A DNA stretch of 10,937 nucleotides. Source: Octopus sinensis. Its lineage: Eukaryota. Under the pieces are notes generated by a model. It worked only from the letters and a program-made list of their open reading frames with translations. It searched no databases and had not been told where the DNA came from. The translations under genes were made by a program, and so were the position numbers. The stretch covers positions 1-10,937 of the forward strand of contig NW_021827145.1 in NCBI RefSeq assembly GCF_006345805.1, written 5' to 3'. Of the stretch, positions 703 to 10,047 are shown piece by piece. Every line of letters starts with the position of its first letter. Position 1 is the stretch's first letter.

Positions 703-933
703 TGTATGTATGTATGTATGTATGCATGCATGCATGTATGTATGTATGTATCTATCTATCTATCTATTTAGTAGGGGCTTCTTTCAGCTTCTATCTGCGA
801 AATCCAGTCACAAGGATTTGGTCGGCTCGAAGCTATAGTAGAAGATACTTGTCCAAAGTGCCACTCAGTGGGACTGAACCCAGAACCATGTAGTTGGGAA
901 GCAAGCTTCTTACCACTCAGCTACTCCAGCGCC
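469..933 (-). mobile_element. tRNA-derived SINE, family A, copy A1 (near full length)
   Basis: The minus strand starts GGCGCTGGAG-TAGCTGAGTGG (Pol III A box) and has GGTTCAGTCCC (B-box-like), then a CORE-like CACTTTGGACAAGTATCTT motif. An internal (TATG)n/(TATC)n tract follows, then a 3' body ending ...CAGCATGGCTGCAGTCAATGAATGAAACAAGTAAAAGAA. It is colinear with the copy at 3751-4105 on the opposite strand. Confidence 0.9.
666..770. repeat. Compound tetranucleotide microsatellite (TATG)n(CATG)3(TATG)n(TATC)n inside SINE A1
   Basis: Seen directly. It explains ORFs 620-838 and 678-893. Confidence 0.95.
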
Positions 934-1659: not shown

Positions 1660-1752
1660 TTAATAATAATAATATATAATAATAATAATAATAATATAAT
1701 AATAATAATAATAATAAATAATAATAATAATGAAATGATAATAATAATAATA

Positions 1753-1803
<51 letters not shown>

Positions 1804-1880
1804 TAAATAATAATAAAATAATAATAAATAATAATTAATAATAATATAATAATGATAATGATAATAATAATAATAATGAA

Positions 1881-1923
<43 letters not shown>

Positions 1924-2022
1924 TATAATGATAATAATAATAATAACTAATAATAATATAATAATAATAAAAATAATAATAAGAATAAAATAAATAATAA
2001 ATAATAATAATGATAATGATAA

Positions 2023-2055
<33 letters not shown>

Positions 2056-2155
2056 TAATACTAAAATAATAATAAATAATAATGCTAATAATAATAATAA
2101 TAATAATAATATAAATAATAATATAATATAATAAATTAATATAATAATAATATTT
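1660..2155. repeat. Imperfect (AAT)n microsatellite, about 500 bp
   Basis: Seen directly. It is the source of the poly-Ile/Leu/Tyr ORF 1660-2193. Confidence 0.97.
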
Positions 2156-2455: not shown

Positions 2456-2608
2456 TATACACACACACACACACACAAACACACGCACGCGCATATATAT
2501 ATATATATATATGTGTGTGTGTATGTGTGTGTGTGTGTGTGTTTTTCTGTTCTACCTTTGAATTATATATGTACACATACACACACACACACACACGCAC
2601 GCACGCGC

Positions 2609-2971: not shown

Positions 2972-3681
2972 TATATATATATTTATCCGCTCAGTCGAAG
3001 TCGACTCTCGGTTACTCGGTCGATCAGTGTCCTCCAGCCTGTTCTATCCTGAGCCGCTTCTTTCAGATTGGCTATGTCCATTCCCGTATCACTCTTGATG
3101 GTGTCAAGCCAGCGGGTTCTTGGTCAGCCTCATCCTCTCTTGCCACTGACCATTCCGAGCATGATGTCCTTCTCCATGGATTTTCTCCGCATAATATGAA
3201 CAAAATATGTCAATCTATGCTTGGTGATCCTAGCTTCTAGCAACAGTTTCGGCTTGATCTGGTTAAGAACTTCTCCATTGGTGAGCCTCGCTGTCCATGT
3301 AATCCGTAAAAGTATTCTCCAACACCAAAGCTCGAATGCATTAATTCTCTTCTGGTCATCTTTCTTTAGTGTCCCGGTAGACAATTGCATTCACCAATCT
3401 GCATTTGGTAGCGAGTCTGATATCTCTACTCTTCCAGATCTTGCTCATGCTGACCATTGCCTCTCTGCCTAGTACTATCCACCGTCTTATTTCTGGAGTG
3501 CACTTACCATCTCGATTTATTTTGGAGCCAAGGAAGATGAAATCAACAACCACTTCGATCTCTTCATTATCGATCTTGATGCTAATGTTTGTTGTGGCTG
3601 CTGTTGACATGATCTTCGTTTTCTTGATATTGAGGTACAGCCCAAATTTCTCACTCTCTTTCTTGACTAGCAGGATAAGAT

Positions 3682-3746: not shown

Positions 3747-3750
3747 CATA

Positions 3751-4105
3751 GGCGCAGGAGTGGTTGAGTGGCAAGGAATTTGTTGCCCAACTACTGGGTT
3801 CTTGTTTTGGTCCCATTGTGGGACACCTAGAGCAGGTATCTTGAGAGTTGATTTGATAAACGTAAACTGAAAGAAGCCCGCCGAAAAAAATATATATTGT
3901 GTGTGCTTTGTGTATGTGTTTGGCCCTACCACTGCTTCACTACCGGTGTTGGTGTGTTAACGTCCCCGTAACTTAGCGATAGAATAACAATCAGGCTTTA
4001 TAAAAATTAATACGTGACTGGGGTCGATAAGTTCGGCTAAAATTCGTCAAGCTGTCCCTCAGCATGGTCACAGTCTAATAACTGAATCAAGTGGACGATA
4101 AAAGA
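3751..4105 (+). mobile_element. tRNA-derived SINE, family A, copy A2 (older or more degraded, two internal deletions)
   Basis: GGCGCAGGAG-TGGTTGAGTGG (A box), a degenerate B box, AACTGAAAGAAGCCCG, a short AT/GT tract, CTGGGGTCGAT and CAGCATGGTCACAGTC...ACTGAATCAAGT. It aligns with the reverse complement of 469-933. Confidence 0.85.
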
Positions 4106-4117
4106 TAGACATTATAA

Positions 4118-4348
4118 GGCGGCGAGCTGGTAGAATCGTTAGCACGTCGGGCGAAATGCTTTGCGGTATTTCGTCTGCCGCTACGTTCTGAGTTCAAATT
4201 CCGCCGGGGTCGACTTTGCCTTTCATCCTTTCGAGGTCGATTAAATAAGTACCAGTTACGCACTGGGATCGATATAATCGACTTAATCCGTTTATCTGTC
4301 CTTTTTCGTCCCCTCTGCGTTTATCCCCTTGTGGACAATAAAGAAATA
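4118..4348 (+). mobile_element. tRNA-derived SINE, family B, left monomer (B1)
   Basis: GGCGGCGAGCTGGTAGAATCG head (A-box-like), GAGTTCAAATTCC B box (4190-4202), central GTCGACTTTGCCTTTCATCCTTTCGAGGTCGAT..AAGTACCAG domain and an A-rich end. It is homologous to 4357-4473 and to 9073-9283 (minus). Confidence 0.9.
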
Positions 4349-4354
4349 AAAATA

Positions 4355-4521
4355 GATATTTCGTCTGCCGTTACGTTATGAGTTCAAATTCGGCCGGGGT
4401 CGACTTTGCTTTTCATCCTTTTGGGGTTGATAAATTAATTACCAGTTGCATACTAGTGCCGATTTAATCGACTGGCCCTCTCCCCTAAAATTTCAGGCGT
4501 TGTACCTATAGTGGAAAGGAT
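4355..4521 (+). mobile_element. Family B SINE right monomer (B2): lacks the A box and has a different 3' tail
   Basis: 4357-4473 aligns without gaps to 4167-4283 (18 mismatches in 117 by my hand count, about 85%). It then continues CCCTCTCCCCTAAAATTTCAGGCGTTGTACC...GAAAGGAT, the tail type also seen in B3. Confidence 0.88.
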
Positions 4522-4874: not shown

Positions 4875-5176
4875 TAGAGGAATCTCGCTTTACGAATTTA
4901 ATTTGTTCCTGAACGCCGTTCGCCAACCAAAATTTTCGCAAACCGAATCTATTTTTCCTATAGGAAATTCAAGAGAAAGAACCGATAATTCGACCAGGGA
5001 TGTACACTGAGTGAAAACTAGACACCAGCTGACACTCTCATACTGATACTCCCAGTTTGTCGTCAACCGTTGTTGCCCGCTTGCCTGTTCGTCACACGAG
5101 ACGTTTTTTGTTCGAAAATCTGTTCGTAAACGGATTTGTTCGTGATAAAAGGCGTTCGTAGGCTGCGCTTCCGCTG
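4875..5176. mobile_element. Decayed non-autonomous Tc1/mariner (pogo/Tigger-like) MITE, about 300 bp
   Basis: The left end TA|TAGAGGAATCTCGCTTTACGAAT and the right end GTTCGTAGGCTGCGCTTCCGCTG form a degenerate TIR pair (14/23 by hand). There are five subterminal GTTCG repeats at 5077-5160 and related motifs on the left. The TTTTTCC.ATAGGAAAT segment is typical of this MITE type (recall). The right TA target duplication is not preserved. Confidence 0.65.
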
Positions 5177-5686
5177 AATTTTTCTCTTTAGAATGAAGCA
5201 CAATTGATATTGGATGCTGTAGTCTATAATTCTTCCGTTTTGACAATTTGGAAGCGTTTTCAATCACAGTGCCATAATATATTTTCTTGACACGTATGGC
5301 CCGAAGGTGGGCCACTTGAATTTTTTAATGCCCAGTGCTATTGCTTGTGTATTCCTTTGTGGTAACGAGCAATGCATACGCTCTTCGTTTGAAAACAATG
5401 TTATCCCTGTTCTTTTATCATAAAACTTTTATAGGGTGTACTCTCAAACCTTTACTTATTTATTCAGTTTGTTGACAATCGAAGAAGACAAAAATGTTGT
5501 TTTAATGTATCGAAGGTCCTTTTTCTTTCTCAATTTAATGTCTCGATCTAAGACGGAGAATTCAATGTTATACAGAAAAAAGCTATATGTATATTTTGAA
5601 AGTACAGTACACCTGCACGTGTATTTCTATGCAGCAAAGTGTAATTAATTTCTTTGAATTAATCTCTTTGCCAAAAGATCCTACCA

Positions 5687-5770
5687 CAGAACGTAAGCGA
5701 GCAAGAAAAATGAAAAGATACAAAATCTATATTATGTATCTTTTCATTTGTCTTGCTCGGTTATGTTCTG
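5687..5770. other. 84-nt near-perfect inverted repeat or hairpin in unique sequence (candidate pri-miRNA or hairpin RNA)
   Basis: Arm 5687-5722 pairs with arm 5735-5770 at 33/36 Watson-Crick positions. On the plus strand there is one extra G-U wobble. The 12-nt loop can pair further (AAT/ATT). The confidence given is for the structure, not for function. Confidence 0.85.
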
Positions 5771-5871
5771 GCGTTTGCTGAATTTTCTTGAGACCATTCC
5801 TTTCTTAGTGGTAAGACCATAGCGGAACTTCTTCTAGCATAATGGATGTCCACTTACAGGTCATTCCTTTT

Positions 5872-5991: not shown

Positions 5992-6285
5992 GAACGAGCA
6001 TGGCCTAGTGGTCAGAGCGTCGTGGTGTAGTGAGTTCGATTCTCGGTGTAGGCTGTGTGCTGTGTTCTTGAGCAAGACACTTTATTTCACGTTGCTCCAG
6101 TTCACTCAGCTGTAGAAATGATTTGCAACGTCATTTGTGCCAAGCTGTATCGACCTTCGCCTTTTCCTTGGATAACATGTGTGGCATGGTCTTCCACAGA
6201 TAGCCTTGCCCTAACTTGTGCCTCGGAAGGGAACTTTCTAGGTGCAATCCCATGCTCATTCATAACCGAAGGGGGGGCGTTACCC
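5992..6285 (+). mobile_element. tRNA-derived SINE, family C
   Basis: A box TGGCCTAGTGG (6001-6011) and B box GAGTTCGATTC (6032-6042). Their spacing is shortened, consistent with a lost anticodon arm. Then come TGTGTTCTTGAGCAAGACACTT and CACTCAGCTGTAGAAATG central motifs, and a 3' end GGTGCAATCCCATG.TCATTCAT.ACCGAAGGGGG..TTACCC matching my recollection of an octopus SINE. Confidence 0.82.
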
Positions 6286-6289
6286 ATTA

Positions 6290-6625
6290 CTCTGTGCATA
6301 TATGAATATATAGTTTGTACACATACACACACACATGTATATATACAGACACGCACTCACATACAGAGGGTGAGAGAGAGGGACAGAAAGAGAGAGACAG
6401 TAAGGCATAGCGAGAGAGACAGCGAGACAAAGCGAAGAACAGAGGTTTAGAGCGAGAAGATAAAACAAGAAAACTGAAGAGAATTTCGGAAAAATGACGA
6501 GATATAGAATATAAAATAAGAGTTTATTGGTGAGTGAGGAAGAAAGACAAAGAGAAAGGAAGACATAGAGACAGGAAGAGGAAGAGTGTGAGGAAGAGGA
6601 AGAGAGAGAGACAAGTAAAGAGTGA
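6290..6625. repeat. (CA)n, (AG)n and purine-rich low-complexity sequence
   Basis: Seen directly. Confidence 0.75.
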
Positions 6626-6687
6626 GGGGGATAAAGAATGTTGCTCTATGTATGATTCATAGAAATGAAATATGCAAAACGGCTGGT

Positions 6688-6843
6688 AGTGGTGGCGGTG
6701 CTGGTGGCGATGAAATTTGTTGTGGTGGTGGTGATGCTGGTGGCGATGAAGTTTGTTGTGGTGGTGGCGATGCTGGTGGCGATGGAGTTTGTTGTGGTGA
6801 TGGCGATAGTGGTGGCGATCCTGGTAGCGATAGAGTTGGTTGT
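6688..6843. repeat. 36-bp minisatellite (3 copies plus a degenerate 4th), unit GGTGGTGGYGATGCTGGTGGCGATGRAGTTTGTTGT
   Basis: Units at 6688-6723, 6724-6759 and 6760-6795, decaying through about 6843. Confidence 0.9.
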
Positions 6844-7105
6844 GTTAATGCTGGTGGCGGCGTTGGCAGCGGTAGTGGTGGTGGCTGTAGTAGTACTGTT
6901 AGCAGTGGTGGTGGTAGTAGTGATGGTGATGACTATATTGGTGGTAGCAGTGGTGGTTGTGATGGTGATAGTGGCAGTGGTAGTAGCTGTGGTGATAGTG
7001 GTAGCGATGCTACTCTTATTGGTGATAGTGGTGATGATGGTAATGCTGATTGTAGTGGTAGTGATGCTTTTGTTGTTGTTGTTGTTGTTATTGTTGTCAT
7101 TGTTG

Positions 7106-7137
<32 letters not shown>

Positions 7138-7150
7138 GGTGGTGATGGTA
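6844..7150. repeat. Cryptic trinucleotide repeat (GGT/AGT/GAT), ending in (GTT)n(GGT)n
   Basis: Seen directly. Confidence 0.9.
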
Positions 7151-7249
7151 GAGAGTGTAATGTTTGAAGAGAGGAAGAAAGGGGGTAATAATAATTTACA
7201 ATGTGAAAGGATTGATTTCAGCCAGTTATTATGAAATCGTTATGATATA

Positions 7250-7800
7250 AAATTAACAAACACACAAAAACAAAACAATAGCAAAAACAATATAAAGATA
7301 CTAAATAAAGAAATAAATGATAACAATAAAAACCAACGCTTCAGGATATTGCTAAACAACAATAGAAACAAAATTTGGTAACCATACAATGACAATAACA
7401 ACAACAGCACCTAGTACAAGAACAACGTTAACAGCAGAAGGACATTAATACATGTGAAAATGAAGAGATACAAAAAAAAAAAAATGTAAAAAAAATATTT
7501 TAAAAATGTAAAAAAAAAAATATAAAACAAAGAAACAAACTATAAAACATTTATAGTCATCAAACATATGATGCAAATAAGCCAAGAAATAAGTTTAAAA
7601 CATGAATGAATTAATGAATAAATAAATAAATAAATGTGGCTGAAGTGCGTCAGAAGAAAATATATCGATGATGATGATGATGATGATGATTGTACTGGTG
7701 GTGGTGGTGAGGTTCGATAAGAGGAGGAGGAAGATGATGGCTGTGGTGATGATGGGGAAAACAATAATGAACATTGTTATAATGATGACAATGACTATAT
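7250..7800. repeat. A/CAA-rich low-complexity sequence followed by (GAT)n/(GGT)n tracts
   Basis: Seen directly. Confidence 0.75.
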
Positions 7801-7812
7801 CACAATGCTGGG

Positions 7813-8192
<380 letters not shown>

Positions 8193-8199
8193 ATTAGAA

Positions 8200-8299
8200 A
8201 AGTCAGATTTTGTCATGAAGATGATGGTGATTGTGTTGACAACGACGACGACGTAAAAAATGATGTTCATTATACTGATATTGGTGCGTCAGCTAAAGT

Positions 8300-8340
<41 letters not shown>

Positions 8341-8602
8341 GTGATGATGCTGAAGATGATGCTGAAGAAGAAGAAGAGGTGGAGGAGCAGCAGAATGATA
8401 ATGATGAAGACGACAATGTTGTTGGCGATGCCGATCATGATGATGATGATGGCGATGATGATGAGGATGATGATGATGATGAGGAGGAGGAGGCGGAAAA
8501 GTAGGATGACGATGGCGACAACATCGATGACAGTGATGAAGACGACGACGGTGACGGCGACAACGATGATGGTGATGATGGCAATGATGATGATGGTGGT
8601 GG

Positions 8603-8638
<36 letters not shown>

Positions 8639-8700
8639 CAACGACGAAGATACTAATGACTGTCATAACGATGATGGTGATGATGATGATGGCGATGAAG
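8200..8700. repeat. Compound (GAT)n/(GAC)n/(GAG)n/(GAA)n trinucleotide repeat
   Basis: Seen directly. It is the source of the poly-D/M ORFs. Confidence 0.93.
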
Positions 8701-8949
8701 CGAAAAATAAATCGAAATAGAATGAGACAAAAGCAAAATACTTGTTGCAACTGAATAAAATATAATTGAAATTATACCCCCACCATCACCACCACCAGCA
8801 ATGAATTAATCAATAATAAAAAAAAAACAAAATAAAAAAATAAAAAGTGTTTTATGAAATATTGAAGGAAACCTTAGAATTTTGAATTGTAAATCTAATG
8901 AGTGAGAACAATTAATTGTCGCAGAAGTCTTTAAATGATTAATGAAGAA

Positions 8950-9009
8950 GCGGTTGATGATCATGTTAATGATGATAATGATGATAACGACGACGACGAC
9001 GACGACGAC

Positions 9010-9072: not shown

Positions 9073-9283
9073 CCTTTGTGCTAAAGGCACAGGGCCTGAA
9101 TTTTTGGGGAAGGGACAAGTCGATTACATGGACCCCAGTGTTTCACTGGTACTTAATTTATCGACCCCCGAAATGATGACAGACACAGTCGACGTCGGCG
9201 GAATTTCAACTCACAACGTAGCGACGGTCGAAATACCGCTAAGCATTTCATCCAGCGTGTTAACGATTGAGCCAGCTCCCAGC
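9073..9283 (-). mobile_element. tRNA-derived SINE, family B, monomeric copy (B3)
   Basis: The reverse complement reads AGCTGGGAGCTGGCTCAATCGTTAACACG...GCGGTATTTCG...GAGTTGAAATTCCGCCGACGTCGAC...GGGGTCGATAAATTAAGTACCAGT...AATCGACTTGTCCCTTCCCCAAAAATTCAGGCCCTGTGCC...AAAGG. It has the head of B1 and the tail of B2. Confidence 0.88.
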
Positions 9284-9301
9284 TTAATAATAATAATAAT
9301 G

Positions 9302-9343: not shown

Positions 9344-9456
9344 GCCCTGGTGCAGTACCAGGCAGCGGCTCTCGTGGCTTCTGATATTAACTGATTGGAA
9401 GTGATATCATGTACATTGTTTTGTCTTGGTATAAAAGATGGGCCACAGCAAATATT
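9343..9456 (-). mobile_element. Unclassified interspersed repeat, family D, copy D1 (retains the presumed 3' end)
   Basis: 9371-9456 aligns without gaps to 9906-9991 (6 mismatches in 86, about 93%). I recall it as a frequent octopus repeat. The orientation is inferred from the adjacent (ATT)n run. Confidence 0.7.
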
Positions 9457-9905: not shown

Positions 9906-10047
9906 CTCATGGCTTCTGATCTTAACTGATTGGAAATGTTATCATGTACATTGTTTTGTCTTGGTATAAACGATGGGCTACAGCAAATATTCTGCTCAAT
10001 ACCACAGACAGTTTACCATGTCCCTTAGTGGTTGACGATATGTGCAT
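9906..10047 (-). mobile_element. Family D repeat, copy D2, truncated at both ends and nested inside the L1/Tx1 relic
   Basis: About 93% identical to D1 over 86 bp. It extends about 56 bp further on one side and lacks the 28 bp at the D1 tail end. LINE-like reading frames continue on both flanks. Confidence 0.7.

What the first reader, a model, noticed from the sequence alone, without database searches (positions are those of the whole stretch)
5687..5770. Unique-sequence hairpin with canonical pri-miRNA geometry: candidate novel cephalopod microRNA or hairpin RNA
Seen: CAGAACGTAAGCGAGCAAGAAAAATGAAAAGATACA-[AAATCTATATTA]-TGTATCTTTTCATTTGTCTTGCTCGGTTATGTTCTG. This is a 36-bp stem with 33 Watson-Crick pairs, 1 G-U and 2 mismatches on the plus strand (3 mismatches on minus). 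The arms are complex sequence, not microsatellite. The flanks pair poorly, there is no TSD (CCA|...|GCG), and no other copy occurs in the window. Established: Microprocessor substrates have stems of about 35 bp with single-stranded flanks, cut about 11 bp from the base, and coleoids have a large lineage-specific miRNA expansion. Inference: a plus-strand cut would give a 5p arm near 5698-5720 (CGAGCAAGAAAAAUGAAAAGAUA) and a 3p arm near 5737-5759. Against: I see no basal UG or downstream CNNC motif, and near-perfect symmetry also fits a young inverted duplication or a tiny palindromic MITE (CAG...CTG ends). Even so, it would be a proto-miRNA, endo-siRNA or ADAR substrate if transcribed.
Basis: partly seen in the sequence, partly recalled or inferred. 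Interest (0 to 1): 0.72.

Follow-up and report, generated by a model that had tools for sequence, protein, structure and literature searches.

The report
Young 84-bp DNA palindrome, unproven microRNA
The hairpin is real, but it is an 84-base near-perfect DNA palindrome in repeat-rich non-coding DNA, most likely made by one replication copying error; nothing found here shows it is a working microRNA gene, so it is probably ordinary.

Summary
Window 5687-5770 folds into a 36-position stem (33 Watson-Crick pairs, 1 G:U, 2 mismatches) at -47.8 kcal/mol (z = -14) on the plus strand and -42.1 (z = -13.6) on the minus strand.

The "12-nt loop" is itself mostly palindromic. The feature is a spacer-less 84-bp palindrome centred at 5728|5729, with 37 of 42 positions complementary. 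Its edges are sharp, and chance expects about 4e-7 such palindromes per 3-Gb genome.

No evidence supports a microRNA:
- no Rfam family comes near threshold;
- there is no basal UG, CNNC, apical UGU or mGHG motif;
- the predicted apical loop is 4 nt, against a preferred 10 nt or more;
- both strands fold about equally well.

In primates, only 0.9% of comparable newly born hairpins are annotated as miRNAs.

There is no target-site duplication, and no further copy in the window beyond the two arms.

My best reading (about 0.55) is a one-step inverted duplication by template switching or fold-back, followed by five point changes, one of them at a CpG. A palindromic MITE made only of terminal repeats is the main rival (about 0.2).

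Copy number, orthologues and small-RNA reads could not be tested. Controls showed that the searchable collections hold no DNA carrying the window's own SINE-like repeat. Interest is low.

The parts
5687..5770 (.). 84-bp near-perfect, spacer-less palindrome, symmetry axis between 5728 and 5729. 37 of 42 positions are Watson-Crick complementary, plus one G:T.
5687..5722 (.). Left arm, 36 nt (CAGAACGTAAGCGAGCAAGAAAAATGAAAAGATACA). It would be the 5p arm of a plus-strand hairpin RNA.
   Evidence: No further copy in the window at up to 3 mismatches.
5723..5734 (.). Central 12 nt (AAATCTATATTA), itself 4/6 palindromic. A:A mismatch at 5723/5734, three A-T pairs at 5724-5726/5731-5733, C:T mismatch at 5727/5730, and T/A at 5728/5729. 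The predicted RNA loop is the 4 nt CUAU (5727-5730).
   Evidence: Pair probabilities are 0.61-0.77 on plus and 0.63-0.82 on minus.
5735..5770 (.). Right arm, 36 nt, the reverse complement of the left arm apart from three differences. One difference (5764 T) is a CpG-to-TpG change relative to the left arm's ACGT.
   Evidence: sequence read.

Best explanation
This is a DNA-level feature: an 84-bp palindrome created in a single mutational step in non-coding, repeat-rich DNA. The inferred step is a replication template switch. The nascent strand either folded back on itself, possibly on the AAT/ATT microhomology around a 4-nt CTAT turn, or crossed to the opposite strand. It then copied about 40 nt in reverse complement and returned to its template. 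This left a sharply bounded inverted duplication with no spacer and no target-site duplication. About five point substitutions have since accumulated, one of them a CpG transition that produces the G:U wobble.

The palindrome most likely has no selected function. If the locus is transcribed, either strand would fold into a 36-40-bp double-stranded hairpin that Dicer or ADAR could act on, which would make it raw material for a new small-RNA gene. It is not a demonstrated microRNA.

Shown: the palindrome, its sharp limits, its improbability by chance, the absence of a TSD and of further copies in the window, and the absence of miRNA motifs. Inferred: the template-switch origin, neutrality, and the behaviour of any transcript.
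For: - The palindrome reaches its centre and has 37 of 42 complementary positions.
- Inverted similarity stops exactly at 5687 and 5770, even with gapped alignment of 330-nt flanks.
- Chance expectation is 4e-7 per 3 Gb, so a copying event is needed.
- No direct repeat of 4-11 nt flanks it at any boundary within about 6 nt; only chance 2-3-nt matches occur, at asymmetric boundaries inside the left arm.
- The window holds no copy of an arm beyond the two arms themselves.
- Both strands fold almost equally well, -47.8 against -42.1 kcal/mol, as expected of a DNA palindrome and not of a strand-specific RNA gene.
- The MFE index is 1.77 at 32% G+C. From my own knowledge this is well above the roughly 1.0 typical of established animal precursors, which points to a young, barely eroded duplex.
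- The only transition among the arm differences is ACGT against ACAT at a CpG, which fits neutral decay.
- A 14-nt tandem duplication lies 17 nt upstream at 5643-5670. This is another replication-slippage signature.
- Literature: template switching creates perfect hairpins in a single event, needs no TSD, and produced over 6,000 miRNA-sized hairpins in the human lineage, of which only 0.9% are annotated miRNAs (PMC10710096).
Against: - The ancestral state was not seen. No orthologous or empty site could be retrieved, so the template switch is inferred from the product alone.
- Genome-wide copy number is unknown. The public collections gave no hit to the arm, but they also gave none to the window's own SINE-like repeat. 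Those nulls therefore say nothing about copy number.
- The CAG...CTG termini and the 80-bp-class size also fit a MITE made only of terminal repeats.
- The five arm differences mean the event is not brand new, so a decayed 2-nt TSD cannot be fully excluded.
- Non-function is a base-rate argument, not a measurement.
Confidence: 0.55

Rival explanations
1. A miniature inverted-repeat transposable element made of little more than two terminal inverted repeats joined head to head, like human Made1. It would have been inserted by a DNA transposase supplied in trans.
For: - Made1 is 80 bp, made of two 37-bp TIRs and 6 bp between them. It is a near-perfect palindrome and the source of the mir-548 genes (PMC1784062). 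The present element is 84 bp with 36-40-nt arms.
- The edges are sharp.
- From my own knowledge, 5'-CAG...CTG-3' termini are common among cut-and-paste transposons.
- The window is dense in other mobile elements.
Against: - There is no target-site duplication of 4-11 nt at any boundary within about 6 nt, and the flanks read CA|...|GC, not TA.
- The internal TA/TA pair at 5694-5695 and 5762-5763 would leave 7 further complementary positions outside the element unexplained.
- The 10.9-kb window holds no further copy or solo arm, although it carries several SINE-like repeat copies.
- The ORF spanning the hairpin shares no words with any of 5.8 billion predicted proteins. This is weak, because no DNA of the source genome appears to be in these collections.
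Confidence: 0.2
2. A genuine, lineage-restricted microRNA gene, whatever its mutational origin. It would be transcribed, cut by Drosha about 11 bp above the base and then by Dicer. This would yield a 5p product near 5698-5719 and a 3p product near 5740-5761.
For: - The stem has 36 positions, and on the plus strand the flanks are mostly single-stranded.
- The predicted duplex has 21 of 22 pairs, with one mismatch at position 10 of the 5p arm. This meets the structural criterion of at least 16 paired nucleotides (PMC12539619).
- Octopuses gained 90 novel miRNA families, and the authors state that species-specific ones were missed by design (PMC9699675).
- Template-switch hairpins are a documented source of new miRNAs.
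Against: - No Rfam family comes near its gathering score.
- No basal UG, no CNNC on either strand, no UGU at the 5' side of the loop and no mGHG (read).
- The apical loop is predicted at 4 nt, against the preferred 10 nt or more.
- Both strands fold alike.
- The candidate seed-site 8-mers are absent from the held, truncated supplements.
- The base rate is 0.9% of suitable newly born hairpins.
- There is no evidence of transcription. No exon or protein-family match lies nearby.
Confidence: 0.05
3. A transcribed but non-miRNA double-stranded hairpin, for example inside an intron. It would act as a Dicer substrate giving endo-siRNAs, or as a site hyper-edited by ADAR.
For: The 36-40-bp near-perfect duplex is stable in its native context on both strands. 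From my own knowledge, ADARs act on duplexes of this length, and coleoid nervous tissue edits heavily.
Against: There is no evidence of transcription. From my own knowledge, the stem is far shorter than known hpRNA loci, which run to hundreds of bp. Nothing here was tested.
Confidence: 0.12
4. An assembly or library artefact: a fold-back chimera.
For: Palindromic chimeras do arise in some library preparations (own knowledge).
Against: The two arms differ at 5 of 42 positions, one of them a CpG transition. An artefactual fold-back would be an exact copy and usually much longer.
Confidence: 0.02

Closest known systems
Hairpins generated by template-switch mutation, including de novo primate miRNAs such as hsa-mir-4713 (Monttinen, Frilander and Loytynoja 2023, PMC10710096)
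   Same: A short, sharply bounded inverted copy lies next to its source and gives a near-perfect stem of miRNA size in a single event. It has no target-site duplication, is single-copy, and sits in non-coding DNA.
   Different: Those cases were inferred from reconstructed ancestors across many genomes, whereas here only the product is seen. The present palindrome has essentially no spacer, and no expression is known. Only 0.9% of such hairpins are annotated miRNAs.
Made1 MITE and the hsa-mir-548 family (Piriyapongsa and Jordan 2007, PMC1784062)
   Same: An 80-bp-class element that is almost nothing but two inverted arms of about 37 nt. It forms a very stable hairpin from either strand.
   Different: From my own knowledge, Made1 is multi-copy and derives from a mariner with TA duplications. 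Here no TSD was found, the window holds no further copy, and no parent transposon is known.
Octopus or coleoid novel miRNA families in MirGeneDB (Zolotarov et al. 2022, PMC9699675)
   Same: The presumed host lineage and the hairpin size.
   Different: Those genes have reads from both arms, 5' homogeneity and 2-nt offsets, and are present in two octopus species. None of this is known here. The candidate strings are absent from the held supplement files.
Microsatellite palindromes that mimic miRNA precursors (the mir-3149, mir-297 and mir-466 type Rfam models)
   Same: They fold as long hairpins on both strands. Several occur in this window at 2459-2661.
   Different: The finding is complex, non-repetitive sequence with arm periodicity 0.47 against 0.8. 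It is not explained by a microsatellite.

Membership tests
Canonical animal microRNA gene (MirGeneDB criteria) | Imperfectly paired hairpin precursor with at least 16 paired nucleotides in the stem | tested here: met
   33 Watson-Crick pairs and 1 G:U in 36 stem positions; the predicted 22-nt duplex has 21 pairs. Criteria quoted from PMC12539619.
Canonical animal microRNA gene (MirGeneDB criteria) | Small-RNA reads from both arms | not testable with these tools
   No small-RNA read data are accessible.
Canonical animal microRNA gene (MirGeneDB criteria) | Homogeneous 5' ends and 2-nt 3' offsets (Drosha and Dicer signatures) | not testable with these tools
   No read data.
Canonical animal microRNA gene (Microprocessor substrate preferences) | Stem of about 35 bp with single-stranded flanks | tested here: inconclusive
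   There are 36 positions up to the A:A mismatch, but 40 up to the 4-nt loop. Flanks are 0.71-0.74 unpaired on the plus strand and 0.49 on the minus strand.
Canonical animal microRNA gene (Microprocessor substrate preferences) | Unstructured apical loop of 10 nt or more | tested here: not met
   The MFE and centroid structures give a 4-nt loop. The three apical A-U pairs form with probability 0.61-0.77 on plus and 0.63-0.82 on minus. The preference is quoted in PMC10710096.
Canonical animal microRNA gene (Microprocessor substrate preferences) | Helper motifs: basal UG, apical UGU/GUG, downstream CNNC, mismatched GHG. These enhance processing and are not strictly defining (own knowledge). | tested here: not met
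   None is at the expected position on either strand (sequence read).
Canonical animal microRNA gene | Membership of a described miRNA family, or presence in a second species | tested here: inconclusive
   The best Rfam scores are 29.2 against gathering 117 and 26.9 against 67. The held supplements and papers lack the strings, but the files are truncated. No related genome could be searched.
MITE (non-autonomous cut-and-paste DNA transposon) | Terminal inverted repeats and small size | tested here: met
   84 bp, with arms of 36-40 nt at about 90% complementarity.
MITE (non-autonomous cut-and-paste DNA transposon) | Target-site duplication flanking the element | tested here: not met
   No direct repeat of 4-11 nt was found at any boundary within about 6 nt. 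Only chance 2-3-nt matches occur, at asymmetric boundaries.
MITE (non-autonomous cut-and-paste DNA transposon) | Many dispersed copies in the genome | not testable with these tools
   The window holds one copy. The public collections hold no DNA with the window's SINE-like repeat, as the control shows, so searches are uninformative.
Template-switch (TSM) inverted duplication | Inverted fragment of 15 nt or more lying next to its source, with sharp limits | tested here: met
   A roughly 40-nt inverted copy abuts its source, with no extension beyond 5687 or 5770. The threshold comes from PMC10710096.
Template-switch (TSM) inverted duplication | An ancestral or sister sequence lacking the inverted copy, with the change explained by the four-point switch model | not testable with these tools
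   No orthologous locus was retrievable.
hpRNA / endo-siRNA locus | Long inverted repeat (hundreds of bp) producing 21-22-nt siRNAs (own knowledge) | tested here: not met
   The stem is only 36-40 bp. Small RNAs are not testable.

The most novel reading that the evidence does not exclude
The palindrome is a very young, species-restricted small-RNA gene of a cephalopod. It would have been born in one step by template switching, be expressed from a host transcript, and be processed into a microRNA or endo-siRNA despite its tiny loop. That would be a direct snapshot of how the coleoid microRNA expansion is fed.
Probability: 0.05. Interest if true: 0.45.

Novelty: new member of a known kind. Interest (0 to 1): 0.17.

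Why it matters
As it stands the finding matters little. Short near-perfect palindromes of this kind are a known and frequent by-product of replication template switching or of tiny MITEs, and fewer than 1 in 100 become annotated microRNAs in the one lineage where this has been counted.

It would matter modestly if small-RNA data showed precise processing. It would then be a datable, single-event birth of a small-RNA gene in a lineage noted for its microRNA expansion.

The case is also a caution for scans. In this window, hairpin geometry alone picks out DNA palindromes, and microsatellite palindromes score even higher against Rfam miRNA models.

Tried and rejected
1. Arm 22-mer scans. Exact-pattern scans with GCAAGAMAAATGAAAAGATACA in metagenome, GTDB genome and IMG/VR contigs gave 0 hits. 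A control with the core of the window's own SINE-like repeat also gave 0 in all three. These collections therefore appear to hold no DNA of the source genome, and the nulls say nothing about copy number.

2. Contig look-ups. I searched for the ORF spanning the hairpin (5587-5781) and for neighbouring ORFs (4890-5315, 6055-6450). None is on record.

3. Protein searches. The hairpin ORF and the 141-aa neighbour gave nothing. The LINE-tail ORF gave only metagenome fragments at 56% identity or less. I found no route to orthologous DNA, and the tools did not confirm the source organism.

4. Rfam at a permissive threshold gave only structure-driven sub-threshold matches for the hairpin.

5. Octopus miRNA paper supplements. 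The arm strings and six plausible seed-site 8-mers are absent. The files hold no precursor sequences and are truncated, so this is weak evidence.

6. Full-text search for arm strings and SINE strings in 8.3 million papers gave none.

7. Extension of the inverted repeat by gapped alignment found none.

8. The TSD scan found none.

9. Coding or exon evidence nearby from Pfam: none. The bacterial promoter and terminator scan is irrelevant here.

10. Rejected readings: Helitron 3' hairpin (stem far too long, no CTRR end); excision footprint of a hAT-type element (palindromic additions are only a few nt); microsatellite palindrome (arm periodicity 0.47); artefact (the arms differ at 5 sites).

Full report
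**Observation.** Counting pair by pair gives 33 Watson-Crick pairs, one G:T (5693/5764) and two mismatches (5697/5760, 5707/5750) over the 36-position arms.

As RNA the 84-mer folds at -47.8 kcal/mol on the plus strand (z = -14.1) and -42.1 on the minus strand (z = -13.6). None of 200 dinucleotide-preserving shuffles folds as well. As single-stranded DNA it folds at -34.3 (z = -15.7). The hairpin survives in 164-nt context on both strands.

**Sharpened anatomy.** Complementarity continues inward: an A:A mismatch at 5723/5734, three A-T pairs at 5724-5726/5731-5733, a C:T mismatch at 5727/5730, and T/A at 5728/5729. The object is therefore an 84-bp palindrome with its axis between 5728 and 5729. 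It has 37 of 42 complementary positions.

The predicted RNA has a 4-nt loop. The three apical A-U pairs form with probabilities of 0.61-0.77 on the plus strand and 0.63-0.82 on the minus strand.

Gapped alignment of 330 nt on each side shows that the inverted similarity stops exactly at 5687 and 5770.

With the window's base composition, the probability of at least 37 of 42 complementary positions is 1.5e-16 per centre. That is about 4e-7 expected in a 3-Gb genome, so a copying event or selection produced it, not chance.

**Context.** The window is eukaryotic, non-coding and repeat-dense.
- It holds several SINE-like repeats.
- It holds a broken LINE-type reverse-transcriptase tail on the minus strand near 3130-3610.
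- It holds long tri- and dinucleotide arrays.
- No ORF near the hairpin matches a protein family.

A scan of all centres and spacers finds this as the only palindrome of complex sequence. The runners-up are (AC)n(AT)n(GT)n and (TA)n microsatellite palindromes. Those microsatellite palindromes give the highest Rfam 'miRNA' scores in the window, though still below gathering.

No copy of an arm occurs elsewhere in the window at up to 3 mismatches. BLAST with short words adds only a 19-nt A-rich match at 7457-7475 with no inverted partner.

**External comparison.** All external routes came back empty, and controls show why.
- The arm 22-mer has no exact match in the metagenome, GTDB genome or IMG/VR collections. 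The core of the window's own SINE-like repeat has none either. These collections appear to contain no DNA of the source genome, so they cannot speak to copy number.
- Exact-protein look-ups for the ORF spanning the hairpin and for two neighbouring ORFs found nothing.
- Homology searches with the hairpin ORF and the 141-aa neighbour found nothing.
- The LINE-tail ORF matched only metagenome fragments at 56% identity or less.

Copy number, orthology and the identity of the organism therefore remain untested.

**MicroRNA tests.** MirGeneDB requires four things (PMC12539619): an imperfect hairpin with at least 16 paired nucleotides, reads from both arms, 5' homogeneity and 2-nt offsets. Only the first can be tested here, and it is met.

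The evidence against a microRNA, or failing to support one, is as follows.
- Microprocessor prefers a 35-bp stem and an unstructured apical loop of 10 nt or more (PMC10710096). The stem length fits; the 4-nt loop does not.
- There is no basal UG, no CNNC downstream on either strand, no UGU at the 5' side of the loop and no mismatched GHG (read). The motif definitions are from my own knowledge of Auyeung 2013 and Fang and Bartel 2015.
- Rfam gives only structure-driven matches far below threshold: MIR837 29.2 against 117, and mir-60 26.9 against 67.
- The octopus miRNA study annotated 164 genes and required presence in two species. Its held supplements contain neither the arm strings nor six plausible seed-site 8-mers. 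They are truncated and hold no precursor sequences, so this is weak evidence.
- No held paper contains the strings.
- Both strands fold nearly equally well.
- The MFE index of 1.77 marks a barely eroded duplex, not a matured precursor (own knowledge).

**Origin.** Two known processes make such objects.

Template switching during replication creates a perfect inverted copy next to its source in one event. It produces no target-site duplication, and it generated more than 6,000 miRNA-sized hairpins in human-lineage genic regions (PMC10710096).

MITEs made only of terminal repeats are also near-perfect palindromes. Made1, for example, has two 37-bp repeats and 6 bp between them (PMC1784062).

Four observations bear on the choice.
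- No direct repeat of 4-11 nt flanks the element at any boundary within about 6 nt. The flanks read CA|...|GC, not TA.
- The window holds a single copy.
- The central AAT/ATT pairs around a 4-nt turn could be a fold-back priming microhomology.
- A 14-nt tandem duplication lies 17 nt upstream.

Together these favour template switching. They do not exclude a MITE, because genome-wide copy number is unknown.

The arm differences look like ordinary decay. The G:U wobble is an ACGT-to-ACAT change at a CpG, and only one of the three stem differences is wobble-compatible on the plus strand, which is no more than neutrality predicts. Five differences in 42 positions mean the event is not brand new, and they argue against an assembly artefact.

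**Verdict.** The probabilities are:
- one-step inverted duplication with no demonstrated function: about 0.55;
- palindromic MITE: about 0.2;
- transcribed non-miRNA dsRNA substrate: about 0.12;
- bona fide lineage-specific microRNA: about 0.05, guided by the 0.9% base rate in primates and raised somewhat for the good stem geometry;
- artefact: about 0.02.

The finding is real but ordinary. It is a new instance of a known kind. Its interest would rise only if small-RNA reads showed precise processing.

Noticed in passing
window 4111-4284 (+) and 9117-9291 (-); partial copy 4357-4473 (+): Two copies of one SINE-like repeat lie in opposite orientation 4.9 kb apart, 80.6% identical over 175 nt. 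A third, partial copy is 84.6% identical. If co-transcribed, the inverted pair would form a much longer double-stranded RNA than the hairpin in question.
   Followed up: partly
window ~760-930 (-), ~3750-3880 (+), ~5996-6110 (+): Further repeats have heads resembling tRNA A and B boxes. The third begins only about 225 nt downstream of the hairpin. Neither ARAGORN nor Rfam calls any of them a tRNA.
   Followed up: partly
window 9371-9456 and 9906-9991: An 86-nt direct repeat, 93% identical and 535 nt apart. The first copy is followed by an (ATT)n run. These may be tails of another repeat family, or a local duplication.
   Followed up: no
window ~3130-3610 (-): A fragment of a LINE-type reverse-transcriptase C-terminal region with a broken reading frame. 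Its closest database relatives are only 56% identical or less, and are metagenome fragments.
   Followed up: partly
window 2459-2542, 2579-2661 (whole 2536-2691 self-inverted): Compound microsatellites (AC)n(AT)n(GT)n fold as hairpins on both strands. They give the best Rfam 'miRNA' scores in the window (mir-3149 70.9 bits against gathering 100; also mir-297 and mir-466). They are look-alikes, not genes.
   Followed up: yes
window 5643-5670: A tandem duplication of a 14-nt unit (AATTAATTTCTTTG / AATTAATCTCTTTG) lies 17 nt upstream of the palindrome. It is a second local slippage-type rearrangement.
   Followed up: partly
window 1661-2152, 7813-8179, 8300-8691, 6689-6819: There are very long trinucleotide arrays. 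(TAA)n and (ATT)n are mutually inverted 5.7 kb apart, and there is also a (TGA)n array. A 36-nt minisatellite is present in 3.6 copies. GC skew is strongly positive across 6500-9000.
   Followed up: no
window 7457-7475: A 19-nt A-rich stretch matches the left arm (5707-5725) at 18 of 19 positions, with no inverted partner. It is probably a compositional coincidence next to an A-rich repeat.
   Followed up: partly
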